The position numbers were made by a program, and so were the translations under genes. DNA of 13,971 nt from Octopus sinensis (lineage: Eukaryota), in assembly GCF_006345805.1 (NCBI RefSeq), contig NW_021825956.1, positions 1 through 13,971 on the forward strand, in the 5' to 3' direction. Below, piece after piece: positions 1,951 through 13,777 of this stretch (positions are counted from its first letter, which is position 1; the number at the start of each line of letters is the position of its first letter). The notes under the pieces were generated by a model. It was given only the letters and a program-made list of their open reading frames with translations, made no database searches and was not told the DNA's origin.

Positions 1951-2075
1951 TACGTAGAAATATATGCACGTGAACAAAAACACACGCGTCTATTGTCTGT
2001 CTGTAAATGTGTATGTATATAAGTATGACAGCGCCATTGTCCACCATACACACACACATACCCACACACACACCC
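1465..2075. repeat. Patchy (GT)n/(CA)n microsatellites with short unique spacers
   Basis: Pure GT runs at about 1555-1582 and 1915-1946 with degenerate CA/GT flanks. Confidence 0.85.
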
Positions 2076-2380
2076 TTGTCATCTCACACACCTTTTTTAC
2101 CATTCCTTCTTTGATTCAGCTCTCCTGTTTTTAAAAACATTTTCCTCCTTTTTTACCACTTCCGTCTTTTTTAGTATGTGACCTCGTGAAGACTACCTGC
2201 AATTTTTTTCCTCTGTCCTCCCGTCTCGGGATCTTTCTTTCTCCTATGTTTCCCGACGAAGAGCTCCGCTCGAAACGCCATACCCTCCTTCCTTCCCTTC
2301 TTTCCTGAGCGTCCAATAATCTTTATTTGTTCCACATCCTCGCGTTGTTGTCCCTTTTTGTTTTCTTGTTTTGGTTAACT
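2070..2380 (+). mobile_element. Pyrimidine-rich retroelement remnant (PLE-like terminal region) carrying a degenerate hammerhead
   Basis: T/C-rich segment containing ccgacga-a-gagc-tcc-gctc-gaaac and ending at a (TA)n tract. The PLE assignment and the boundaries are inferred from the HHR motif only. Confidence 0.5.
2248..2284 (+). ncRNA. Degenerate minimal hammerhead ribozyme, probably inactive
   Basis: CCGACGA (2253-2259), stem II GAGC/GCTC with loop tcc, GAAAC (2272-2276). It is followed by GCC instead of GUH, and stem I pairs poorly. Confidence 0.5.
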
Positions 2381-2426
2381 TTATATATATATATATATAT
2401 ATAATATATATATATTATATCATTAT

Positions 2427-3089
2427 TAATAGGGTTCAGCAAAGATTTGCTTTACCCCATACCGAAGTTTAGAAATAGCAGCCAAAGAACCTTAGCTATT
2501 TCCTCTACTTTAAAAAGAGACTCCCGGAAAAAACAAATTACTCGAAAACAATCCACGAAGGTAGAAAAATAACGAAAATCAATCGATATTAGATTACCCA
2601 TGTACGCGTTTCGGAATTAGATCGGTATAAAGAATGTTTAATTTATACTTTACCCGAGCATTTTCTTCGTCAGCATGGGACTTCACAATATTAAATTCGA
2701 AGGCACTGGAAGAACTGAACATATCTCTCCAACTAACGGTACCAGACAGATCATATTAAACGCCAGTACCGCCGAATTTAAAATATACGAATGAGGTTCA
2801 TCATCTTCCCCTGCCCATTCGCGTATGTCGTCAAGTAAAATACTACAGAAAAAAATCTGTAGTTTATTATCAGGGAGAAAATTATATTATCAATAATAAC
2901 AAAAGGTAAAATGAATTAATTGACAAGTAATCAATAATTTCACCAAGTAGCATTCGGCATGAAAAAGGACCATTTCACAGTAAACTGAAGTAATACTTTA
3001 TAATAGGGTTCAGCAAAGATTTGCTTTACCACATACGGAAGTTTAGAAAGAGCAGACAAAGAACCTTAGCTATTTCCTCTACTTTAAAA
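2427..3089 (-). mobile_element. Retrozyme-like / non-autonomous PLE-like element: 574-bp unit with 89-bp terminal direct repeats, set in (TA)n
   Basis: 2427-2515 and 3001-3089 are direct repeats with 4 mismatches in 89 bp (offset 574). There is an internal intact HHR at 2597-2679 (-), (TA)n on both flanks, and no ORF. Confidence 0.75.
2597..2679 (-). ncRNA. Type-I hammerhead ribozyme, minimal palindromic stem III; predicted cut GUA between 2603 and 2602
   Basis: Minus strand reads CCCATG-CTGACGA-a-GAA...TCGG...TAAAG/CTTTA...CCGA...TTC-c-GAAAC-GC-GT-A-CATGGG. Stem I is a perfect 6 bp (CCCATG/CATGGG), the core is canonical, and stem III is the palindrome ACGCGT. Confidence 0.88.
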
Positions 3090-3125
3090 TTATATATATA
3101 TATTATATATATATATATATATATA

Positions 3126-3556
3126 AATAATGAGGGTGAATAAAATTACTAGATATTAATTCAATAATCCCTTATTTTAAACACCAAGCGACCTAGCACA
3201 AAAAAACCGGGGACACAAATCAAGTACGATATATTATATCCGTAAAGTTAGAGAGTCAACTTTTTGAATATGTTAACTCTAGTGCTAGAAATAGGTCCTC
3301 GATCGGTAAAAGTCGCCGACGAAAATCCACATAGAAATAGCACCACAATCAACGCTATGAAATTAAATTACTACTAAATAATGGATTAATGTTGTACAAT
3401 TGTTTCTTCATTACCAAAATGCAGATTATACCTTACATAATTGTCTATGATTCATCAGCAACATTTGTCAATATAATTGATCAGACCCTTACAAGCGACG
3501 ATTCTCATATGGTCCGATCAATTACATTCTGTTGTAGTTACAAATTTCCCGCCGAA
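3126..3556 (-). mobile_element. Second HHR-bearing AT-rich element (PLE-like terminal region, different family)
   Basis: Unique AT-rich segment bounded by microsatellites, with an HHR at 3388-3465 and an 18-bp hairpin at 3470-3528. It shows no similarity to 2427-3089 outside the HHR core. Boundaries are approximate. Confidence 0.55.
3388..3465 (-). ncRNA. Type-I hammerhead ribozyme, palindromic stem III; predicted cut GUA between 3395 and 3394
   Basis: Minus strand reads AATGTTG-CTGATGA-a-TCAT...ATTAT/ATAAT...ATGA-a-GAAAC-AATT-GT-A-CAACATT. Stem I is a perfect 7 bp, the core is canonical, and the palindrome is ACAATTGT (3396-3403). Confidence 0.87.
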
Positions 3557-3935
3557 ATATATATATACACGCACAAACACACACATACATACACTCACAC
3601 ACACACATATATATATACATGCGTGTGTGTATATATATGTCTATATACATGTATATATACGTGCGTGTGTGTGAGTGTATGTATGTGTGTGTTTGTGCGT
3701 GTGTGTGTGCGTGATCACTTTATACATATATAAACGCGTTTCGTTTGAGATTTTGTGTATGTGTTTGTGTTCGCAAACGCATGCATATGTGTGTGTGTGT
3801 ATCTCTGTGTGTATGTGTGCATTTGCATGTGTGTGTATGCGTGTGTATGTGTGTCTGTGTTTGTGTGTGTGTGTTTGTGTTTGTGTGTTTATACGTGCAA
3901 ATGCGCGTGAGTGCTTGCAAGTGTATATGCGTTGA
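3557..3935. repeat. Compound (TA)/(CA)/(GT) microsatellite
   Basis: Read directly from the sequence. Confidence 0.93.
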
Positions 3936-4294
3936 AACTTAGCTTATTGTCTGAAGAAGCTTAAATTTATTTTGTTCAAGTGTTTTTTTTTTTTTTTTAA
4001 ATCGTAATAAAGGGAGACAACTCAGCTCATCGTCAACTGAATTATGTAATTAAAATTTTTTTAGTTATTTTATTCATTCATTTTCGTAAATCTATTTCTT
4101 TAACTAGTTTCATTCATTAGACTGCGGCCATGCTGGGGCATCGCCTTGAAGAATTCCGATCGAATGAATTGACCTCAGTACTTTTAGTTTTTAAAATCTG
4201 ATTCTTCTTCTATCGGCTGGTTGTCAAGCGGTGGCTAAAGACAAGGACACGCATGCGCGCACACACACGTACACACACATACACATCTTTATAT

Positions 4295-4897
4295 GGCGGC
4301 TGTGTTGTAAGAACTTCCCAACCACATGGTTCTAGGTTCAGACCTATTGTGTGGCACCTTAGGCAACTGTCGTCTAGCACTGAGCCGACGGAAGCCTTGT
4401 GAGTGGATTTGGTAGATGGAAACTGAAAGAAGCCCACCGTGTATATGCACACACACACACACACACACACACACGCGCACACACACACATATCCTCTGCT
4501 CTGGAAGCACTCCGTCGGTTACGACGACGAGTGTTCCGGTTGATCCGATCAACGGAACAGCCTGCTCGTGAAATTAGCGTGTAAGTGGCTGAGCACTCCA
4601 CAGACACGTGTACCCTTAACGTAGTTCTAACCACTGGGCCATTGCGCCTCCACACACAGACACATATATGTATGTGTGTCTTTGTCTCTGTGTTTGTCCC
4701 ATTCCCACCGCTCGTTAACCGGTGTTGGTGTGTTTGCGTCCCCGTAACTTAGTGATTCAGGAAAACAGACCGATAGAATAAATACCAGGCTTTAGAAAAT
4801 ATGTTCTGGGGGTTGATTCGCTGGTTGACTAAAACCCTTCAAGGTGGTGTCCCAGCATGGCCGCAGTTAAATGTCCGAAACAAGAAGCGGATAAAAG
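4295..4897 (+). mobile_element. Family-A SINE (middle element): head/core 4295-4446, microsatellite linker, tail about 4675-4897
   Basis: ggcggctgtgttgtaag A-box-like, ggttcagacc B-box-like, core gccttgtgagtggatttggtagatggaaactgaaagaagccc. The tail gtccccgtaacttag...agaccgatag...cagcatggccgcagt...gaaacaag matches 11935-12085. ATAT occurs at both flanks (4291-4294 and 4898-4901). Confidence 0.88.
4504..4653 (-). mobile_element. Internally deleted family-B SINE (innermost element)
   Basis: The minus strand starts gtggaggcgcaatggcccagtggttag (a good A box) and jumps at about 4628 straight to aactacgttaagggtacacgtgtctgtgg..., a tail homologous to 620-731. No B box is present. Confidence 0.75.
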
Positions 4898-5164
4898 ATA
4901 TGATGCGCCTCTTTCATTTCCCCTCCACCAAATTCACTCACAAGGCTTTGGTCGATCCGGAACCATTGTAGAGGACACTTGTCCAGGGTCTTGCACAATG
5001 GGACTGAACCCAGGACTATGTCGTTGGGAATCAAACTTCTTACCACACAGCCATACCTCCCGAACATTTTTGACCTTATACTTCAATTAATTAAGTAATT
5101 AATTAATCGTCATTTGAGGAATATATTAAAACTTTTATTCCAAGAAAGGTCTTCGAAAGCATCT

Positions 5165-5375
5165 TGTTATCTGTCTGTTTTAGTCACTGAACTGCAGCCA
5201 TGCTGGAGCACCACCATGAACGGTTTTAGTCTAAAAAGGCGACCCCTGTACTTATATTCAAGTCTGGCATTTATTCTAGCGGTTGTCTTTTGCCGAACTA
5301 CTAAATTACAGGGATGTAAACAAACCAAGACCGAGTGTCAAGTCGTGTAGGTGGACAAAGTCGGACATAAAGATT

Positions 5376-5410
<35 letters not shown>

Positions 5411-5501
5411 GCACACACACACACGCACGCACGCACACACTCACTCACACAGACATGCGTATTCTACGAGCTTCTGTACATTTTCCGCCAATCAAATTCA
5501 C
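5165..5501 (-). mobile_element. 5'-truncated family-A SINE (core fragment 5458-5501, CA linker, tail 5165-5375)
   Basis: ctgcagccatgctggagcaccacc and ttttgccgaactactaaattacagggatgtaaac are reverse complements of the family-A tail. tacgagcttctgtacattttccgcc...aaattcac is the reverse complement of the core end. Confidence 0.78.
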
Positions 5502-6200
5502 ATATTTTGACTTCTAAAGGCAGCTTCACTACAATTATTGTGGAGGGAAAAAAATTCTCTCTTATGGCAATAAGATGTAAAAAAATACCCTACCTCCCTA
5601 GTGCTTTCTCCAACCAGATTCCCAGATGTGTCTGGCTCTTTAGCTTTCCTTGATGGGAAATACCGGAGAGAGATATACTCTGGACAGATTCAAAGCCGTA
5701 GCTTCAGCTAAAAGCACTCAACATCAGCGACTGAATTGCGCTCATCGACCGCCCGGTAGGAATAAAAACAGCTGCACCAGAATCAAGAATTAATGGAGAA
5801 TAAACGAACTTTAGGTGAGTTAAAATATATTTGTGACACATTTCAGCTTCCAAAGGCAAATTTGTTGCAGTTACCATGGAGAAAAAAAATGTTCTCTTTT
5901 ATGGTTATTAAGGTGTAAAAATACCCCACCTCCGCAGTGCTCTTCCCGTACCGGATTCCCAGAGGCATTTCTGGCTCTTTAACCTTCTTCAATGGAAAAT
6001 AGCAAATAGAGATAACCGAAGGCAAAAACAAAATCGTAGCTTTATCTAAAAACAATCGGCGACTAAGTTGCACTCGTACACTGCTTTGTCGGAATAAAAA
6101 CAGCAAGCAGCATCAACGTGAAGCAGTGATTAATTAGGAATAAACAAATTTTTTGATTAATTAAAGTATGTTTGTGACATATTTTAACTCTTAAAAATAA
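5499..6200. repeat. Diverged tandem repeat, unit about 332-341 bp, about 2.1 copies
   Basis: Collinear anchors: aaaggca (5516/5852), tctggctcttta (5631/5970), ggaataaaaacagc (5759/6091), gaataaac (5798/6138), ttgtgaca (5831/6172). Confidence 0.85.
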
Positions 6201-6278
6201 ACTCACCGAAGACAATCCACTAGGGTATTGCTACTCAAAGTGGTGGTGTGCGGCCAGTTTCCAGAAAAGAAAGAAACA

Positions 6279-6314
6279 TTATAAAATGCTTACAAAATGC
6301 TTATAAAATGCTTA
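6279..6314. repeat. 11-bp tandem repeat TTA(T/C)AAAATGC x3
   Basis: ttataaaatgc ttacaaaatgc ttataaaatgc tta. Confidence 0.9.
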
Positions 6315-6553
6315 TGTAATATTGTATTACTTGTTTACAAAATAAATATAAGATTTAAAAAATTGTCAACTTTTATTATATTCATTATATACATCGGTGG
6401 TTTGTTGCCAACTTAATGTGGCATTCCCAGCAAAGGGAAGAATTCCACTGCTATTTAGCCCCAAGAAACACCGTTTCTAGTTGGCTACGTTACACAAGCG
6501 TTCTGCGTCCTTAAGTTTTCAGACTGGGGAGACGAAACATTTATAAATAGAAG

Positions 6554-6601
6554 ATCTTACAGCTGTTTCTGTGATAATTTATACATCCCTTCGTCGGAGA
6601 C
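6554..6601 (-). ncRNA. Minimal type-I hammerhead (U4C core variant), left arm
   Basis: Minus strand reads GTCT-CCGACGA-a-GGGAT...ATCAC-a-GAAAC-AGCT-GT-A-AGAT. The palindrome is ACAGCTGT, and stems I and II are imperfect. Confidence 0.68.
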
Positions 6602-6766
6602 GGTGTGAGAAAATAGTTAAGCAATAGTTAATTTAGATAAGATATGAAATAGAGAGTGAAGTGGAGGAATGAAAATAGATGTGAGATGTGCATATCTTAC
6701 ATCTATCTTCACTCTCTATTTCATTTTTTATCTAGAATAACTATTGCTTAACCATTCTCTCACACC

Positions 6767-6814
6767 GTCTCCGATGAAGAGATATAAAAAATATCCCGGA
6801 AACAGCTGTAAGAC
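6767..6814 (+). ncRNA. Minimal type-I hammerhead (U4C core variant), right arm; predicted cut GUA between 6810 and 6811
   Basis: GTCT-CCGATGA-a-GAGATAT-aaaaa-ATATCCC-g-GAAAC-AGCT-GT-A-AGAC. Stem I is 4 bp and the palindrome is ACAGCTGT (6802-6809). Confidence 0.78.
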
Positions 6815-7037
6815 CTTCTATTTATAAATGTTCTGAAATCATCACAGCCTTGGGTCTTTTTTTATCTCATTCTGAAAAAAAAATTTTGTATATACACTTG
6901 CTGATATATGACCTACATCGGACTCCTTGCTCGCATAATCACCAAACTTGGACCTTAACTATGATCTGTCCTTAGTACTTAATCAGCATTACCTGACACC
7001 TTTGGGTCTTATTGACACAATTACCTGTCATAACCTT

Positions 7038-7038
7038 A

Positions 7039-7099
<61 letters not shown>

Positions 7100-7208
7100 T
7101 ATAATATATATATACATATGTAATATATATATATATACATAGTATATATATATATATATAATATATATATATATATACATATGTATATATATATATATAT
7201 ATACATAG

Positions 7209-7242
<34 letters not shown>

Positions 7243-7272
7243 CATAGTATATATATATATATATAATATATA

Positions 7273-7317
<45 letters not shown>

Positions 7318-7515
7318 ATATACATATGTAAATATAATATATATATATATATTATATATATAATATATATACACACACAAGCATACATGTGAGTGTGCTT
7401 TGTGTGTGTGTGTGTGTGTATATATATGTGTGTATATATATATAGTGTCTGTATGTCTATTTATGTAAGTGCTTGTATGAATGTATGTTTGTGTGTGTGT
7501 GTGTGTGTGTGTTTA
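7038..7515. repeat. Long interrupted (TA)n followed by (TG)n microsatellite
   Basis: Read directly from the sequence. Confidence 0.97.
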
Positions 7516-7839
7516 TGTCCCCATATAATTACCAGTGTATGTACAACAAACACTAAGGTCACATAATCAGACGCATTCGTCAACCAAACAATGCTCCCAC
7601 CAACACCACAGAAACCCAAACCACCGTGAACATATTATAGACAACATCATCCCCGTCCCCACACTTTCTTCGACCTCATGCTTTCAGACCCCCCCCCCCC
7701 CACCCGCCCCCTCCAACGACACCCTCGGCAACACCTCCCCAACCCCTCCACAGTCTTAATTAACGATGCGGTCGTCCTGTCCTGTGGTTAGACATTCTGT
7801 CTATTGTCCCGAAGAAAGAGAGGATACTTTATTTGTACA

Positions 7840-9520
7840 CAAACACGCACGCACACACACACACACATACACGTACACACACACACACACACACACACGT
7901 GCACACACGCAGCAATGTGCATGCACGTATACACACACACGCGCACACAGATCAGCGCGTACATACTCATGCGCACACACCAATTTGCAGTCGCCAGCAA
8001 CACCACCACGACCATGAGCAGTATCAACACTATTGCCTATACTACAACGACTGTTACTATCCCTACCAACACCACCACAGCTACCACCACCAATACTAAC
8101 ACCTCATCATCATCATCATCATCATCATCACATCATCATCATCATCATCGTCGTCGTCGTCATCATCATCATCATCATCATTATCCCTACCACCATGATC
8201 ACCATCACCACAGCCATCATCACCATCATCACCACCACCATCACTACCACCATACCACGACCAACACTAGCATCTCCACCATTATCATCACCACCACTAT
8301 CCCCACCACCAGGACAATCACGACCACGCCCTTCCCCTCATCAAAACTAACGTGACTCTAAAATATCCACCACAACTACCACTACAGCCTTCAGCACCAC
8401 CACCGCCGGCCGCCGCTGCCGCCAACACCCACAACAACAACAGCAACAACAACATACCGCTATGCTTTACCGTTGCCATGACCATCACTCTCCACAATTA
8501 CCAATTACCTTTATCTTCATCATCTTCATCATCATCATCATCATCTTCTTCATGATCATCATCATGATCATCATCATGATCATCATCATCACCACCATCA
8601 CCATCATCATCATCATCATCATCATCTTCAATATTATCGTAATCCCCACTATGTCCACCACCACTATAACCACCAAAACCACCACCACCACCACGACCAT
8701 CACCACCATCACTACTACTACTACCACCAAATCACCTCTGTGCTGTATGATCACCGTAAACATCACTCTCCACTTAATTATCACCTACCACCAACACCAT
8801 CACCAGCACCACCACCACAATCGACATCATCTTCGACATCACCATCACCATAACCACCACCATCCTCACCACCAGCGCTACCATTTCCAGTATCCACCAC
8901 CACCAGGACCCACGACTATGCCATCCAACAACAAACCATTGTATGCAGGAAACACCCCGCCATCAAACGGCATTACCGTTTCTATGGCAACATACTATCA
9001 CCGAGACAACAACCAGTTAACGCTATCACTGCTAATTCAGCGTTATCATATCGCATCATCACCACCATCCTACATCACCGCAACCACTACCACCACTACT
9101 ACCACCGCCATCACAACCACCACCACCACCACCACCACCACCACAACAACCACCACCACAAACACTACCACCACCACAACTATGGCCAGCAGCAAAAGCA
9201 GCAGCAGCAGCACCACCACCACCACCACCATCAACGCCACCGTCACCACCACCGCCACACCCTAAGCAGGCACCACCACATCTACTACCGCTACCACTGT
9301 CGCCGCCACCATCACCACCACAATCACCACTACTATTACAACCATCGCAACCACTGCAGCCACAGCTACCAGTACCACCATCACCACTACAACACGACCA
9401 AACGTACTAACACCACCAGCACTACAACCCCTACAACACAATCACTACCATCACTAGTACCTCGACCATCACTATCATCATCATCGCCATCACAGAACAC
9501 CAGTCTCAGCAGCGAATCAC
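7840..9520. repeat. (CA)n followed by degenerate trinucleotide low-complexity tract (CAT/CAC/ACT/AAC)
   Basis: Continuous imperfect triplet repeats. The poly-H, poly-T and poly-I ORFs here are translations of these repeats. Confidence 0.92.
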
Positions 9521-9534
9521 CAAGGAAGACTATA

Positions 9535-9755
9535 TACTATCGCTCGCCGGGTTAGAAATAGCAGTCAAACCTCCCTCGGATCACACCCTACGTTAAAACA
9601 CGGACACGTTGGATTGATTGGTCAAGGATTCGTGACATATAGAGAAAATGGAGAGTGTTAGTCATGGCTGGACTGCTTTTAATAATAAAGTTGCTCACTT
9701 GGAGCTGACTTTGGTGCTAAACAATAAAAGCAGGGTCTTCAACAACAACTACAAC
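9535..9755 (+). mobile_element. Short interspersed repeat (family E) ending in an (AAC)n-like tail
   Basis: ccctc...accctac...ttggat (9568-9612) is similar to 11513-11555, and ctga...ggtgctaaacaa (9705-9725) is similar to 12156-12175. Identity is low and judged by eye. Confidence 0.5.
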
Positions 9756-9756
9756 A

Positions 9757-9943
9757 TCGGTTTCAAATTTTGGCACAAGGCCAGCAGTTTCAGGAGCGGG
9801 GGTAAATCGATTATATTGACCCCCCCCCCCCAGTGTTCAACTGGTATTTATTTCAGCCGACCCGAAAGGATGAAAATCAATGTTGATCCCCAGCGGGATT
9901 TGAACTCAGAATGTTTAAGATGCGCGAAATGCCGCTAAGCATT
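9757..9943 (-). mobile_element. 5'-truncated tRNA-derived SINE (family D)
   Basis: Minus-strand B box GAGTTCAAATCCC (9895-9907), followed by tttcatcctttcgggtcgg...aaataaataccag. This resembles the conserved central domain of widespread animal SINEs (MetaSINE-like; from memory, unverified). The gaccccag...ctggta(t/c)ttatt module is shared with the family-A tail. Confidence 0.7.
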
Positions 9944-9944
9944 T

Positions 9945-10082
9945 TCGCGGTTTCGATTCCCAGATCGGGCATTGTGAGTGTTTATTGAGCAAAAACACCT
10001 AAAGCTCCACGAGACTCCGGAGGGGTGGTGGTGGTGAGCCCCGCTGTACTCTTTCACCACAACTTTCTCTCACTCTTTCTTC
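9945..10082 (+). mobile_element. SINE fragment (B box plus central region, A box missing)
   Basis: B box ggtttcgattccc (9949-9961), followed by a SINE-like core gtgagtgtttattgagcaaaaacacctaaagctccac. Assignment to family B is inferred. Confidence 0.6.
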
Positions 10083-10084
10083 AT

Positions 10085-10501
10085 ACTTCTGCCACAAAGC
10101 AGAGGAACCATGGTGTAACCCACTAATGTGTGGTAAAACTTTCAGACCCTAGTCTAGATTGCGAATCCTCTGTACCCCAGGATGGTTCAGCTCTCCACCC
10201 GTTAAAAGCCACCGTGTGGTGGGTGGATCTTCAAGTTGCCACACGCATTCTTAGTATCTTAGAGTAGTCTCGAATTAGAGATTATTCTTTGTGGCTAATG
10301 CCGTGAGCCCTGATTGGAAGAAGAAGAAGAAGAAGAAGACGAAGTAGAAAAGAAGAAGCGAAAAAAAGAAGAAGAAGAAAGAAGAAGAAGAAGAAGAAGA
10401 AGAAGAAGAAGAAGAGAAGAAGAAGAAAGAAGAAGAAGAGAAGAAGAAGAAGAAGAAGTAGAGGTAGAAGAAGTAGAAGAGAAGAAGACGAAGAAGAAGA
10501 A

Positions 10502-10532
<31 letters not shown>

Positions 10533-10543
10533 TAGAAGAAGAA

Positions 10544-10578
<35 letters not shown>

Positions 10579-10640
10579 AGAAGAAGAAGAAGAAGAAGAA
10601 AAGAAGAAGAAGAAGAAGAAGAAGAAGAAGAAGAAGAAGA
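10085..10640 (+). mobile_element. Probable non-LTR retroelement 3' end: stem-loop plus about 320-bp (GAA)n tail
   Basis: 11-bp stem-loop at 10261-10288, a small ggc-taat-gcc hairpin, then (GAA)n from 10317. The repeat itself is certain; the retroelement origin is inferred. Confidence 0.55.
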
Positions 10641-11450
10641 CAACAACAGCTTCAAGAGCGACAGCAATGTCGACAATAACAAGAACAAGAACAGCAACAA
10701 TATCTGCAACATGACCACCACCACCACTATCCCTACTTCAACATTCCACTACCACTACAACCACAACCATTTCACGTTCACCATCCTCATTTCAACATTG
10801 CACGACGACGACGACGATCACCATCACCACCACTACCACCGCCGCTGCCGCTGCCAACACCACCACCTTCTCACTCTCACCATCCCCAATTCAACATTCC
10901 ACCACCACCACCACCACTATTTCCCCAGCACTATCACTACAACATTACAACCACTACCACCACACCACCACCACCACCACCACCAGCACCACACCACCAC
11001 CACCAGCACCACACCACAATCAAAACCACCACCGCCACCACCACTACAACCACCACCACCATCACCACCACCGCTACCGCCATCACCGTCGTCACTAGCG
11101 CTACACCATTACCACCACCCTGTCCACCATTTTTAATTTAGCGTACAATGGTTACATTGAACATACTTCAGATTAATTAGACAATTACCACCGTCACTAA
11201 TAACGCCTACTGGCCCCCACCACAAAGAGCCTTCACCACTGACCTCCGCCGCCAGTGGACACCGCCGTCATTGCTCTTCCCTTACGCATCTCTGTTACTG
11301 TGGAATCACCACTCGCCACCACCACCACCACCACATTGCGCCTGTGACGCCACCAACACCTTCACCATCTATGGGCATGATCAGCACTAACCCCGCCGCC
11401 GCTGCCACTACCACTACCATCACCACCTCCAGCATTGCAACCAGTGACAG
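10640..11450. repeat. Degenerate (CAC)n/(AAC)n low-complexity tract
   Basis: Read directly from the sequence. Confidence 0.9.
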
Positions 11451-11477
11451 CAAACAGGAAAAGTGGGAGCTTCTACG

Positions 11478-11763
11478 TCATTGCATGACCTGCAAAGAGT
11501 AACAACGAAATGACCCTCAAATTGTACCCTGCCGTCTTGAAAAAAGATTGGATAACGTAGTCCAGGTTATTTTGTCTCAAAAAAATAAAGAAAAGAAAAA
11601 GAAAGTAGTGGCTGTGTGGTAAACAGCTTGCTTACCAGCCACATGGTTCCGGGTACAGTCCCACTGCGTGGCACCTTGGACAAGTGTCTTCTACTATAGC
11701 TTCGGGCCGACCAATGCCTTGTGAGTGGATTTGGTGGACGGAAAATGAAAGAAGCTCGTCGTA

Positions 11764-11849
<86 letters not shown>

Positions 11850-12190
11850 TGTGTGTGTGTGTGGTGTGTGTGTGTGTGTATGTTTGTGCATTTGTGTCTG
11901 TCCCCCCAACATCGCTTGACAACCGATGCTGGTGTGTTTTACGTCCCCGTAACTTAGCGATTCGGCAAAACAGACCGATAGTATAATAAGTACTAGGCTT
12001 ACAAAGAATAAGTCCTGGGGTCTATTTGCTCGACTAAAGGCGGTGCTCCAGCATGAGCACAGTCAAATGACTGAAACAAGTAAAAGAATAAAAGAGTAAA
12101 AGAACAGAGAAAGGCAAGTTGGTCACGTGTCTAATATATCAGGACTGAATTAGGGATAAACAACAGCAACAACAACAACAACCATAATAA
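11478..12190 (+). mobile_element. Family-E repeat interrupted by a family-A SINE
   Basis: The 5' part (11478-11600) and the tail with (AAC)n (12105-12190) each resemble consecutive parts of 9535-9755. A-rich sequence lies at both junctions. Confidence 0.45.
11605..12103 (+). mobile_element. Full-length family-A tRNA-derived SINE with internal (TA)n(TG)n linker
   Basis: A box tggctgtgtggt (11609-11620) and B-box-like gggtacagtcc (11651-11661). gtggcaccttggacaagtgtctt resembles the CORE-SINE motif. The microsatellite spans 11762-11885, and the tail ends in (TAAAAGA[A/G])n. Homologous pieces occur at 384, 4088-5061 and 5165. Confidence 0.92.
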
Positions 12191-12975
12191 CAAAAATAAT
12201 CTTTCTAAAAATTTTGATGCCCACAGAGACGAATCATAGAAGGGTTTTTACATGGGTTGGCAGATCATGCTTGCCATTAGGTCTCTATAAAATACAAAGC
12301 TTGATGTTTCATCTGGTGGAAGGCTGTAAGAATCTGGGACCATTTTAGGTGACTGAGGAGACAAGATTTAGGAAATGGGTCTAACAAATGACGATAATGG
12401 CAGCCCTTCGACAAGGGTTCTGTGCAAACAGCGCTTGCTTTGGGACTAAACACTTCATTTCACGTTGACCCGCAATCACTTCGACATCTGACGTGTTGTA
12501 CACCGTGTACCTGTTTAGGCAACGTCGAATTGCTGGAGACAGTGAACTAGTGTACGGCACTCACCATAAACAAATCATTTGCGCATGCTCAGCAAGAAAT
12601 TGCAGAACCATCTTTCTCGGACGACAAGAGACAACCATCATCATACTTGGGGAATGCTGTAAGCATGGAGCTTATAACAAATGAAACACAAGTCTTTATA
12701 TATTATTTATATTAAATTCAAAATCCCTGTCCCACAAAAATGAGATGTTAGATGTTAATGGGTTAAATGTAAATTTATTACAAAATTGTAAAGGAATTTC
12801 TCTTAGGAAAACTTACAAATAAATATTGGCTTTTCTCTATTAAATTTTAATAAGTTGTTAGTATGTCTGCCCCTATGTCTGTGTCTGTCTGTCTGTCTGT
12901 CTGTCTGTAAGTATGTATGTATGTATGCATGAAATAATAAATCTCTGAGCAAAGTATAAATAGTAGCTGCATGAC

Positions 12976-13367
12976 ATCGTGAAGTATATTTGCTATTTAA
13001 ATGTGGCTAACCCTTAAGGATGGATGCTACTGTAGCGTGTAGCTCCAGGAGGACATCTCCTCCTGCTGGTTATTGACACACTTTCTGTGCCCTATCAGTA
13101 TTTGCAAAGGGAAGCCATCCTTCCCATTCTAACCTGACGTGATACACATAGTCTCGAGTTTCTGATGACGGGTCAATACCCAGAAACTCGAGTCCGTGTG
13201 TATCACGTCAGGCTGGAGATGTGAAAGATAACTTCCCTTTGCAAATACTGATAGGGCACAGAAAGTGTGTCAATAGCCAGCTGAAGATGTCCTCCTGGGG
13301 CTACAAGCTACAGTAGCATCCACTCTTAAGGGTTAGCCACATTTAAGCGGCAAATATACTTCACGAT
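12976..13367. mobile_element. 392-bp foldback element with a hammerhead core forming the apex
   Basis: 12976-13164 is the reverse complement of 13181-13367 (about 85-90% identity by eye). The 16-nt loop is atgacgggtcaatacc. Confidence 0.95.
13162..13194 (+). ncRNA. Hammerhead core lacking the 5' strand of stem I; GUC site between 13194 and 13195
   Basis: CTGATGA-c-GGG-tcaata-CCC-a-GAAAC-TCGA-GT-C, with palindrome ACTCGAGT. The upstream gagttt cannot pair with the downstream cgtgtg. Confidence 0.8.
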
Positions 13368-13399
13368 ATGTATGCATGCTTGTATGCATGTATGAGTGT

Positions 13400-13777
13400 A
13401 CGTATGTTCTCTTTCTCTTTTTAAATTTAAAGTAAATTTTGACCGGCCTCCGATTTGCTAGCAAGGTCATGAGGGAAAGTATTTTGTTTTGACCATTACC
13501 CTTTAAAATCTTAAGAAGGTTTTGCAGATTTTTGTAGGTCCCAGATATCGTGATTATTTGTACGGTAGGAATTAAGGATTTGCATTCTCTCCCCAAAATA
13601 TTTTTTTTCCTTTTCCTTTTATTTTCTATCCCACCCCCTTTTTTTGTCCTCTTTCTTTCCTTTTACGATCCCTTTTGATCGAAAACCAAACTCCCATTTT
13701 TACCCCCAAAAGAAAATCTCTACCTTGTAATTTGGCCTGTCTGTGTGCAGCCCTGTGTGGCTAATAAAGAAACATAT
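13400..13777 (+). mobile_element. Possible retroelement 3' UTR remnant
   Basis: Pyrimidine-rich tract, AATAAA at 13763-13768, then immediately a (TATC)n tail. No ORF support. Confidence 0.35.

What the first reader, a model, noticed from the sequence alone, without database searches (positions are those of the whole stretch)
2248..13194. Six minimal hammerhead ribozymes from about five families in 11 kb, each with its own palindromic stem-III 'key'
Seen: type-I HHR topology at 2597(-), 3388(-), 6554(-) and 6767(+), a core lacking half of stem I at 13162(+), and a decayed copy at 2248(+). Stem III is a different palindrome in each family: ACGCGT, ACAATTGT, ACAGCTGT, ACTCGAGT, and possibly an ancestral ACGT at 2248. 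Stems I and II and the flanks are unrelated between families. Established: minimal type-I HHRs with palindromic stem III occur in Penelope-like elements and animal retrozymes and cleave efficiently as dimers. Inference: the distinct palindromes could act as family-specific dimerisation codes in a diverse population of non-coding ribozyme mobile elements that use PLE machinery. No RT or GIY-YIG ORF is present in the window.
Basis: partly seen in the sequence, partly recalled or inferred. Interest (0 to 1): 0.82.

Follow-up and report, generated by a model that had tools for sequence, protein, structure and literature searches.

The report
Hammerhead ribozymes in Penelope-type retroelement copies
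The window holds four separate non-coding retroelement insertions carrying hammerhead self-cleaving RNA motifs of the kind already known from Penelope-like elements and animal retrozymes. Two motifs are intact and the others are altered or truncated, so this is a new example of a known thing.

Summary
The motifs are at the stated coordinates, but they are not six equivalent ribozymes.

- **Intact:** 2679→2597(-) and 3465→3388(-) are complete type-I hammerheads. They have a perfect CUGANGA…GAAA core, a 6-7 bp stem I, a palindromic helix III and H17=A. No such match appeared in 300 dinucleotide shuffles.
- **Core variant:** 6601→6554(-) and 6767-6814(+) are the two arms of one foldback. Both carry CCGANGA (U4→C), which published mutagenesis predicts to be poorly active.
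- **Truncated:** 13162(+) has a perfect core, helix II and helix III. It has no stem I because two 5'-truncated copies are joined head-to-head there.
- **Unsupported:** 2253-2279(+) has two core changes and no stem I. Its helix III reads ACGC, not ACGT. It cannot be told from chance.

No Rfam hammerhead model matches any of them.

The surrounding anatomy fits Penelope-type integration. One element is a partial tandem (89-bp direct repeats, 96% identical). Two are inverted pairs with 3' ends pointing outward. Three of the four elements are flanked by microsatellite-type sequence. None has an ORF.

The "family-specific dimerisation key" idea is untested. Homoduplexes are predicted to be far more stable than heteroduplexes, but that holds for almost any set of different palindromes. 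No motif here has a same-strand partner.

Verdict: new members of a known kind, of modest interest.

The parts
2597..2679 (-). Hammerhead A, type I, intact core. Stem I CCCAUG/CAUGGG, CUGACGA, 54-nt helix II, GAA, helix III ACGCGU, H17=A at 2603. Predicted cleavage between 2603 and 2602.
   Evidence: Descriptor hit; 0 of 300 shuffles. The hammerhead-compatible fold lies 2 kcal/mol above the MFE, and helix II folds as one long imperfect hairpin. The homodimer MFE uses the intermolecular ACGCGU duplex.
2427..3089 (-). Element A: partial tandem made of an 89-bp repeat R, 485 bp of internal sequence holding hammerhead A, and R again. Unit length 574 bp. No ORF.
   Evidence: R copies 2427-2515 and 3001-3089 are 96% identical with 574 bp spacing. 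(TA)n lies directly outside both ends.
2384..2426 (.). (TA)n microsatellite flanking element A on the left.
   Evidence: Sequence; TA-rich repeat families.
3090..3127 (.). (TA)n microsatellite between element A and element B.
   Evidence: Sequence.
3128..3555 (-). Element B: a single non-coding copy of about 428 bp between (TA)n 3090-3127 and (TA)n(CA)n from 3556. Same orientation as A.
   Evidence: Sequence. No significant internal direct or inverted repeat and no significant similarity to A.
3388..3465 (-). Hammerhead B, type I, intact core. Stem I AAUGUUG/CAACAUU, CUGAUGA, 45-nt helix II, GAA, helix III ACAAUUGU, H17=A at 3395.
   Evidence: The hammerhead-compatible fold lies 2.2 kcal/mol above the MFE.
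6536..6832 (.). Foldback element C/D: two copies of about 150 nt joined head-to-head at 6690|6691 with no spacer. The 3' ends point outward.
   Evidence: Arm alignment: 16 substitutions in 142 aligned positions plus one 13-nt indel. Self-BLAST.
6554..6601 (-). Hammerhead-like C. GUCU, CCGACGA (U4->C), 21-nt helix II, GAA, ACAGCUGU, A (6558), AGAU.
   Evidence: Relaxed descriptor. Homodimer helix III predicted.
6767..6814 (+). Hammerhead-like D. GUCU, CCGAUGA (U4->C), 21-nt helix II, GAA, ACAGCUGU, A (6810), AGAC.
   Evidence: The 8 differences from C all lie in N7, the helix II region or the stem-I wobble, and 0 of 22 constrained positions differ (Fisher p=0.005).
12965..13380 (.). Foldback element E: two 5'-truncated copies of about 200 nt joined head-to-head, with 3' ends outward. 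The junction lies inside the hammerhead, with CUG/CAG microhomology at 13162-13164 and 13181-13183. Degenerate (TCTG/TATG)n-type sequence lies on both sides.
   Evidence: Arm alignment 12965-13164 | 13181-13380. 85.5% identity by self-BLAST. Flanks read.
13162..13194 (+). Hammerhead E. Perfect core CUGAUGA, C.A mismatch, helix II GGGU/ACCC with loop CAAU, GAA, helix III ACUCGAGU, C17 at 13194. The 5' strand of stem I is missing, and the MFE is a long hairpin instead.
   Evidence: 0.01 expected. The fold is a perfect hairpin, z=-6.
2253..2279 (+). Doubtful motif F. CCGACGA-A-GAGC-UCC-GCUC-GAA-ACGC-C, with U4->C, U16.1->C and no stem I.
   Evidence: One-mismatch minimal cores are expected 0.475 times per window. 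Fold unremarkable.

Best explanation
The window is repeat-rich intergenic DNA of an animal; the organism was not identified. It has received at least four independent insertions of short, non-coding retroelements that carry type-I hammerhead ribozymes. These are the class known from the pseudo-LTRs of Penelope-like elements (PLEs) and from metazoan non-LTR retrozymes.

In an active source locus the elements would sit in tandem. Two hammerheads in one transcript would pair through their palindromic helix III to form the active dimer, and cleavage after H17 would release unit-length RNA. For retrozymes this RNA is ligated into a circle. A PLE reverse transcriptase/GIY-YIG endonuclease supplied in trans would then copy the RNA into nicked target DNA.

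The copies seen here are products of that process, not sources.
- Element A is a 1.15-unit partial tandem, as expected from copying a circular or multimeric template.
- C/D and E are pairs of 5'-truncated cDNAs primed from both target strands and joined head-to-head.
- A, B and E lie in microsatellite-type sequence.

Only A and B still have complete, canonical hammerheads. C/D carry a family-wide U4C change. E lost the 5' strand of stem I through truncation. F is probably not a hammerhead.

Shown: the motifs, their statistics, the repeat architecture and the flanks. Inferred: transcription, cleavage, dimerisation, circularisation and the identity of the mobilising enzyme.
For: - **Motif statistics.** A and B: 2 observed, 0 in 300 shuffles. 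E core plus helix II: 1 observed against 0.01 expected; with helix III added, 0 of 100 shuffles.
- **Features not in my descriptors.** All of A-E have a 1x1 non-Watson-Crick pair at the base of helix II, followed by G-C (U-A in B). All have H17 = A or C. C/D also show the PLE-type short helix I (4 bp) and long helix II (7 positions, one of them mismatched).
- **Constraint between C and D.** Their 8 differences avoid all 22 constrained hammerhead positions (p=0.005), and the 18-nt 3' tail is identical.
- **Architecture.** The 89-bp direct repeats are 96% identical, spaced 574 bp apart, and bounded by (TA)n. The foldbacks have their 3' ends outward.
- **Literature.** PLEs form partial tandems (pLTRs), adjacent inverted 5'-truncated copies and microsatellite insertions, (TA)n among them (PMC8557442). 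A PLE protein cleaves and extends both target strands (PMC11167929). Metazoan type-I hammerheads have a 1-2 bp helix III capped by a palindromic loop and act as dimers (PMC4209133). Retrozyme consensus lengths run from 51 to 972 bp, many families occur per genome, dispersed monomers are common, and the elements are related to PLE pLTRs (bioRxiv 10.64898/2026.07.22.740005).
- **Dimer folding.** Homodimer folds use the intermolecular helix III for A, C and D.
- **Coding capacity.** No ORFs.
Against: - No Rfam hammerhead model matches any motif, even at E<=10 on short sub-regions.
- Helix II of A and B is 54 and 45 nt, far longer than described PLE or retrozyme hammerheads, and its folding energy is only marginally better than shuffles.
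- A-E all have an unpaired nucleotide on the 3' side of helix II as well as the 5' side. This is not part of the published PLE minimal motif, and the canonical G10.1-C11.1 pair is displaced by one position.
- No further copies could be retrieved, so there is no covariation test within a family.
- No RT/GIY-YIG remnant is present, so the link to PLE machinery rests on architecture alone.
- C/D have no microsatellite flank and no clear target-site duplication.
- No cleavage, expression or circular-RNA data exist.
Confidence: 0.75

Rival explanations
1. The elements are not dedicated non-autonomous families. They are ordinary dead-on-arrival 5'-truncated copies or solo pLTR fragments of several autonomous PLE families, and each 'family key' is simply that PLE family's own hammerhead.
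For: PLE hammerheads lie in the pLTR, and inverted 5'-truncated copies are typical (PMC8557442). C/D arms are only about 150 nt, with the hammerhead 21 nt from the 3' end. E is visibly truncated inside the hammerhead. Octopus vulgaris, if the host is a cephalopod, has 30 recently active Penelope families (PMC13282606).
Against: Element A is a complete 574-bp unit repeated 1.15 times with no room for an ORF. That fits a short non-autonomous unit better than a truncated 3-kb PLE. No RT or EN remnant adjoins any copy.
Confidence: 0.35
2. The helix III palindromes are a selected recognition code. Each family's hammerhead can only dimerise, and so cleave, with its own kind, which keeps co-resident ribozyme elements from interfering with one another.
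For: Predicted homoduplex energies are -6.4 to -11.1 kcal/mol and every cross-family duplex is -2.2 or weaker. Four different palindromes occur within 11 kb.
Against: Any set of different palindromes gives this result. The palindrome constraint plus drift explains the diversity, because a change in one half must be matched in the other half. Published dimerisation is between tandem copies of one transcript, where no discrimination is needed (PMC4209133, PMC6765202). ACAAUUGU and ACAGCUGU differ only in the central two bases. No same-strand partner exists for any motif here.
Confidence: 0.1
3. The foldbacks C/D and E are DNA-level palindromes (foldback or MITE-type DNA transposons, or replication-generated inverted duplications) that only happen to contain hammerhead-like strings.
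For: Both are near-complete palindromes with little or no spacer. In E the GUUUC/GAAAC pairing is simply part of the palindrome, and the MFE is a plain hairpin. C/D have a non-canonical core, and the motif alone is expected 0.125 times per window.
Against: E carries the asymmetric UGAUGAC insertion that completes a perfect CUGAUGA, a 4-bp helix II and GAAA (0.01 expected). C and D differ only at hammerhead-permitted positions (p=0.005). No terminal-inverted-repeat plus target-site-duplication signature was seen at the ends.
Confidence: 0.1
4. All the motifs are chance matches in AT-rich, repeat-rich sequence.
For: No Rfam hammerhead hit. F and a further one-mismatch core at 5992->5968(-) are at chance level.
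Against: For A and B, 0 of 300 shuffles matched, and a rough analytic expectation is about 0.002 per window. E is expected 0.01 times. A shared helix II base mismatch was not part of the descriptor.
Confidence: 0.03

Closest known systems
Hammerhead ribozymes of Penelope-like elements (minimal or small type-I HHRs in pLTRs; Cervera & de la Pena 2014, PMC4209133; Lunse et al. 2017, which was not readable here)
   Same: Type-I topology. Palindromic, very short helix III implying a dimeric active form. Short helix I (4 bp in C/D). Longer helix II and an extra nucleotide after A9. Several divergent variants within one genome. Host elements show partial tandems, inverted truncated copies and microsatellite targets.
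   Different: No RT/GIY-YIG ORF adjoins any copy. There is an extra unpaired nucleotide on the 3' side of helix II as well, so G10.1-C11.1 is displaced by one position. Helix II is 45-54 nt in A and B. C/D have C at position 4.
Metazoan non-LTR retrozymes (Cervera & de la Pena 2020, PMC7229834; Li, Clavereau & Pollet 2026, bioRxiv 10.64898/2026.07.22.740005)
   Same: Non-coding, low-GC units within the reported 51-972 bp range that carry one type-I hammerhead. Many families per genome. Dispersed monomers. Thought to be mobilised by PLEs. Element A (574-bp unit, 1.15 copies) fits rolling-circle or multimer copying.
   Different: Retrozymes are defined by tandem arrays in which every unit has a hammerhead. 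Here no array has two hammerheads of one family. Canonical retrozyme hammerheads have a 4-bp helix II with loop-loop contacts, which A and B lack. No circular RNA evidence.
'HHR_core' / 'HHR_half_core' motifs in the 3' UTRs of Naiad PLEs (Craig et al. 2021, PMC8557442)
   Same: The two core halves are 35-50 nt apart, compared with 45-54 nt in A and B. Naiads prefer (TA)n targets, as A and B show. Naiad remnants are reported in cephalopods.
   Different: Those motifs were reported as not fitting hammerhead stem descriptors. A and B have complete stems I and III. Neither the clade nor the host could be tested here.
Newt/salamander satellite 2 and Schistosoma Sm-alpha hammerheads
   Same: Type-I hammerheads on short non-coding repeats. 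Weak helix III with a palindromic loop. Dimer-dependent cleavage.
   Different: Those are high-copy satellite or SINE-like repeats with canonical short helix II. No tRNA-like promoter was found here, and no satellite array.

Membership tests
Hammerhead ribozyme, type I | Conserved core C3 U4 G5 A6 N7 G8 A9 ... G12 A13 A14 | tested here: met
   Met by A, B and E. NOT met by C, D and F, which have C at position 4. Single mutants of the CUGA turn have low activity (PMC9901934).
Hammerhead ribozyme, type I | A15.1-U16.1 pair and a non-G nucleotide (H17) at the cleavage site | tested here: met
   A, B, C and D have A...U then A. E has A...U then C. F has C at 16.1, so it does not meet this.
Hammerhead ribozyme, type I | Three helices around the core, with stem I open and abutting C3 and H17 | tested here: met
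   Stem I is 6 bp in A, 7 bp in B and 4 bp in C/D, abutting directly. Helix II closes as one hairpin. E and F have no stem I, so they do not meet this.
Hammerhead ribozyme, type I | Match to a curated covariance model (Rfam hammerhead families) | tested here: not met
   No hammerhead family appears among hits at E<=10, on the whole window or on the sub-regions. Plausible reasons are the long helix II (A, B), the missing stem I (E) and the core change with short stems (C/D).
Hammerhead ribozyme, type I | Compensatory changes in the stems among homologous copies | tested here: inconclusive
   Only C versus D are homologous. There is 1 pair-preserving change in stem I, 1 in helix II, and 1 doubly hit mismatched pair. 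No further copies were obtainable.
Hammerhead ribozyme, type I | Site-specific self-cleavage | not testable with these tools
   Needs in vitro transcription of monomer and dimer constructs.
PLE-associated minimal/dimeric hammerhead | Very short helix III with palindromic 15.2-16.2 and loop 3 | tested here: met
   ACGCGU, ACAAUUGU, ACAGCUGU and ACUCGAGU. Intermolecular helix III appears in the homodimer MFE of A, C and D.
PLE-associated minimal/dimeric hammerhead | Unpaired nucleotide between A9 and 10.1, followed by a G10.1-C11.1 pair adjacent to G12 | tested here: inconclusive
   The extra 5' nucleotide is present in A-F. In A-E there is also an extra 3' nucleotide, giving a 1x1 internal loop (A.C, A.A, A.A, A.G, C.A). 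The next pair is G-C in A, C, D and E, and U-A in B.
PLE-associated minimal/dimeric hammerhead | Location in the pseudo-LTR of an element encoding RT and a GIY-YIG endonuclease | tested here: not met
   No ORF of 90 aa or more other than low-complexity translation. Degraded remnants were not excluded, because the Pfam six-frame scan could not be run.
PLE-type insertion architecture | Partial tandem (pLTR-like direct repeat), adjacent inverted 5'-truncated copy, microsatellite target | tested here: met
   R-body-R, 96% identical repeats, in (TA)n. Foldbacks with 3' ends outward. E is flanked by degenerate (TCTG/TATG)n-type sequence. Defining features taken from PMC8557442. C/D have no microsatellite flank.
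Metazoan non-LTR retrozyme | Tandem array of two or more units, each with a type-I hammerhead | tested here: not met
   Element A is 1.15 units with one hammerhead. B is a single copy. C/D and E are inverted, not tandem.
Metazoan non-LTR retrozyme | Short non-coding low-GC unit | tested here: met
   Units of about 150-574 bp. GC is 0.32-0.36 over 2001-3500 and 0.34 over 6001-7000. No ORFs.
Metazoan non-LTR retrozyme | Expression as self-cleaved linear and circular RNA | not testable with these tools
   Needs RNA-seq, northern blots or divergent-primer RT-PCR from the source organism.

The most novel reading that the evidence does not exclude
These motifs may represent an undescribed hammerhead sub-lineage, possibly cephalopod-specific. 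Its marks would be a 1x1 non-canonical pair at the base of helix II, tolerance of a very long helix II (45-54 nt) and, in one family, a conserved C at core position 4. In this reading the helix III palindrome has diversified under selection so that co-resident families process only their own transcripts.
Probability: 0.1. Interest if true: 0.6.

Novelty: new member of a known kind. Interest (0 to 1): 0.33.

Why it matters
If confirmed genome-wide, this would add several hammerhead-bearing, PLE-type non-coding retroelement families in a host that appears not to have been surveyed for them. My literature searches found no paper describing retrozymes or hammerheads in cephalopods. The host itself is unverified.

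Two details could be useful to ribozyme specialists.
- The extra non-canonical pair at the base of helix II is shared by four otherwise unrelated families.
- The C/D family has a U4C core, yet its two diverged copies differ only at positions a hammerhead tolerates. That makes it a natural test of whether position 4 is as immutable as mutagenesis suggests.

Otherwise the finding illustrates known biology: palindromic helix III, dimeric hammerheads, and PLE partial tandems and inverted copies in microsatellites.

Tried and rejected
- **Rfam scans.** Gathering thresholds and E<=10, on the whole window and on three sub-regions. No hammerhead family appeared. The many 'miRNA' hits are microsatellite or foldback hairpins.
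- **Retrieving other copies.** Two exact-pattern scans of metagenome contigs, one with the R repeat and one with the C/D hammerhead, found 0 hits. An exact look-up of 10 window ORFs in the protein collection found none. Homologue searches with the ORF over hammerhead B and with a SINE-derived ORF found none. So there is no within-family covariation test and no host identification.
- **Homology between A and B.** Global and local alignments were not significant. The region downstream of the cleavage site gave p about 0.04, the helix II inserts shared a 10/11 match at p about 0.15, and the upstream region showed nothing. I rejected the idea that A and B are two units of one decayed tandem, because R is 96% identical while the rest is unalignable.
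- **Homology between the F region and 13430-13760.** None.
- **Lunse et al. 2017 (PMC5785218).** Not held.
- **tRNA-like promoter search.** None found.
- **Type-III reading of E.** I considered upstream CUCGAG acting as the 16.x strand. I rejected it because it leaves no stem I at all.

Full report
**What is in the sequence.** The window is AT-rich and dominated by microsatellites of (CA)n, (TA)n, (TCTA)n and (GAA)n and by long CAC/CAT-rich tracts. It also holds several SINE-like repeats. It has no tRNA gene. It has no ORF of 90 aa or more other than translated low-complexity DNA. It looks like intergenic DNA of an invertebrate. From memory the SINE-like repeats resemble those of octopus genomes, but I could not verify the host.

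**Checking the six motifs.** I wrote a type-I hammerhead descriptor and compared counts with dinucleotide-preserving shuffles. The descriptor requires stem I, CUGANGA, a helix II region, GAAA, a helix III that pairs from its ends, U16.1, a non-G H17, and stem I again.
- The strict form (stem I of 6 bp or more) finds exactly two sites and none in 300 shuffles.
  - A, 2679→2597(-): CCCAUG-CUGACGA-[54 nt]-GAA-ACGCGU-A-CAUGGG.
  - B, 3465→3388(-): AAUGUUG-CUGAUGA-[45 nt]-GAA-ACAAUUGU-A-CAACAUU.
- Allowing C at position 4 adds two more.
  - C, 6601→6554(-), and D, 6767-6814(+): GUCU-CCGAYGA-[21 nt]-GAA-ACAGCUGU-A-AGAY.
  - With any single core mismatch allowed, 0.125 such hits are expected per window. 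C and D are the two arms of one inverted repeat, so they are a single event. The motif alone is therefore only moderately significant.
- E, 13162-13194(+): CUGAUGA-C-GGGU-CAAU-ACCC-A-GAA-ACUCGAGU-C, with no stem I. Core plus helix II is expected 0.01 times per window. With the palindrome added it was never seen in 100 shuffles.
- F, 2253-2279(+): CCGACGA-A-GAGC-UCC-GCUC-GAA-ACGC. It has two core changes (U4C, U16.1C) and no stem I. Minimal cores with one mismatch are expected 0.475 times per window, and another such chance hit lies at 5992→5968(-). F cannot be told from chance. The suggested ACGT is not present; the sequence reads ACGC.

No Rfam hammerhead family matches any site, even at E<=10 on short sub-regions. 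The failure is explicable by the long helix II inserts, the missing stem I, and the core change with short stems.

**Fold.**
- The helix II regions of A and B each fold on their own into one long, imperfect hairpin that closes at the expected place.
- The hammerhead-compatible fold is within about 2 kcal/mol of the unconstrained minimum. Overall energies are not better than shuffles.
- As monomers none can make a stable helix III.
- In homodimer folding, A, C and D use the intermolecular palindrome duplex.
- E folds as a plain long hairpin (z = -6).
- One feature I did not search for is common to A-E. Helix II starts with a non-Watson-Crick 1x1 pair (A·C, A·A, A·A, A·G, C·A) and then G-C (U-A in B).
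- The published PLE minimal hammerhead has the extra nucleotide only on the 5' side, with G10.1-C11.1 next to G12 (PMC4209133). The axolotl HHR_Amex2 has a U·U mismatch at the base of helix II (PMC7229834).

**Surroundings.**
- *Element A.* Hammerhead A lies inside a 663-bp unit. The unit is an 89-bp repeat R (2427-2515), 485 bp, then R again (3001-3089, 96% identical, 574 bp spacing). (TA)n lies directly outside both ends. This is a 1.15-unit partial tandem inserted into a (TA)n tract.
- *Element B.* It spans about 3128-3555 and sits next to A in the same orientation, between (TA)n and (TA)n(CA)n. It has no internal repeat and no significant similarity to A.
- *C/D.* They form a spacer-less foldback, 6536-6690 | 6691-6832. 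Each arm is about 150 nt, and the hammerhead lies 21 nt from the outer, 3' end.
- *E.* It lies at the centre of a foldback, 12965-13164 | 13181-13380. The only unique sequence is AUGACGGGUCAAUACC. The right copy begins at about C3 of the core. The left, inverted copy begins at CAGAAAC. They meet at a CUG/CAG microhomology. That explains why the 5' strand of stem I is absent: both copies are 5'-truncated.
- *Orientation.* In both foldbacks the 3' ends point outward.
- *E flanks.* E is flanked by degenerate (TCTG/TATG)n-type sequence on both sides.

**Comparison with the literature.**
- Metazoan type-I hammerheads typically have a 1-2 bp helix III capped by a 2-4 nt palindromic loop and are thought to act as dimers.
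- PLE variants have a short helix I, a longer helix II, an extra nucleotide after A9, great sequence diversity within a genome, and poor in vitro cleavage even as dimers (PMC4209133; PMC6765202).
- PLE insertions form partial tandems (pLTRs), often with an adjacent inverted 5'-truncated copy, and are biased to microsatellites, (TA)n among them (PMC8557442).
- A purified PLE protein cleaves and extends both target strands (PMC11167929). That would give exactly the '3' ends out, 5' ends meeting' inverted pairs seen here; this link is my inference.
- Animal non-LTR retrozymes have consensus lengths of 51-972 bp, occur in many families per genome with variable fractions of dispersed monomers, and are related to PLE pLTRs (bioRxiv 10.64898/2026.07.22.740005).
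- Every structural feature of the four elements is therefore already described for this class.

**Are the altered motifs functional?**
- Comprehensive mutagenesis found low activity for all single mutants of the CUGA turn except the C3/G8 swap (PMC9901934). The CCGA cores of C/D and F are therefore predicted to be weak.
- Against simple decay, C and D differ at 8 of 48 hammerhead positions. All 8 are at N7, in the helix II region, or at a wobble-preserving stem I position.
- None of the 22 constrained positions differs (core, GAA, helix III, H17, 5' strand of stem I). This gives Fisher p=0.005. The 18-nt 3' tail is also identical.
- This suggests the two arms came from related templates that had diverged under constraint, with C4 being a family trait. 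It is a post-hoc test on one pair, and I treat it as a lead.

**The 'dimerisation key' idea.** Predicted homoduplexes are -6.4 to -11.1 kcal/mol, and every heteroduplex is -2.2 or weaker. The palindromes are therefore mutually poor partners. The same would hold for almost any set of different palindromes. It follows from drift under the constraint that both halves must change together. Dimerisation is normally between tandem copies in one transcript, where no discrimination is needed. In this window no motif has a same-strand partner of its own family; A, B and E are single, and C and D lie on opposite strands. These copies cannot dimerise in cis and are best seen as dead products. I give the 'code' reading about 10%.

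**Verdict.**
- *Observation:* partly confirmed. Two motifs are intact, one pair is a core variant, one is truncated, and one is unsupported.
- *Interpretation:* partly supported. PLE-type non-coding hammerhead elements, yes; a dimerisation code is untested and unnecessary.
- *Unresolved:* whether these are dedicated non-autonomous families or truncated copies of autonomous PLEs. Element A favours the former. C/D and E are compatible with either.
- *Novelty:* new members of a known kind.
- *Limits:* all attempts to obtain further copies or identify the host failed. Within-family covariation, the decisive computational test, remains to be done on the source genome.

Noticed in passing
5500-6184: Two tandem units of about 345 bp (5500-5843 and 5836-6184), about 70% identical. 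They are non-coding, and my descriptors found no hammerhead core apart from one chance-level one-mismatch core at 5992->5968(-). The repeat family is unknown and could be another partial-tandem retroelement.
   Followed up: partly
9552-9569 (compare 2469-2486 and 3043-3060): The 18-mer TTAGAAATAGCAG(C/T)CAAA from the R repeat of element A recurs at 9552-9569 (17/18 identical; 0 of 500 shuffles reach the score). The surrounding sequence is otherwise unrelated. Its meaning is unknown.
   Followed up: partly
449-536, 4298-4447, 4898-5053(-), 11609-11769; 4669-4898, 5176-5408(-), 11851-12095: Several copies (68-79% identical) of a two-module SINE-like repeat. In the 11609-12095 copy the modules are separated by an internal (TA)n(TG)n microsatellite. 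ARAGORN detected no tRNA-like head. From memory they resemble octopus SINEs; this is unverified.
   Followed up: partly
2597-2679, 3388-3465, 6554-6601, 6767-6814, 13162-13194: All five hammerhead motifs begin helix II with a non-Watson-Crick 1x1 pair (A.C, A.A, A.A, A.G, C.A) before the first G-C pair (U-A in B). This shared feature was not part of the search descriptor and is not in the published PLE minimal-hammerhead description.
   Followed up: partly
2427-2436 and 3128-3139 (minus strand 3' ends of elements A and B): Both elements end with ACCCU(C)AUUA exactly at the junction with (TA)n. This could be a shared 3'-end signal or microhomology with the target. It is not significant as a free alignment (81 of 500 shuffles).
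   Followed up: partly
3563-3706, 6530-6840, 13124-13224: Sub-threshold Rfam 'microRNA precursor' hits (mir-5014, MIR821, mir-196 and others) on both strands. They reflect (CA/TG)n-(TA)n palindromic microsatellite and the two long foldbacks, not miRNA genes. Long perfect hairpins of this kind could nevertheless give rise to small RNAs if transcribed.
   Followed up: no
7980-9500 and 10650-11450; 10320-10640: About 2.3 kb of strand-asymmetric CAC/CAT/ACC-rich low-complexity sequence (GC skew down to -0.7), in two blocks that are about 66-70% similar to each other. They flank a 320-bp (GAA)n tract. It yields long spurious His/Thr/Pro-rich ORFs.
   Followed up: no
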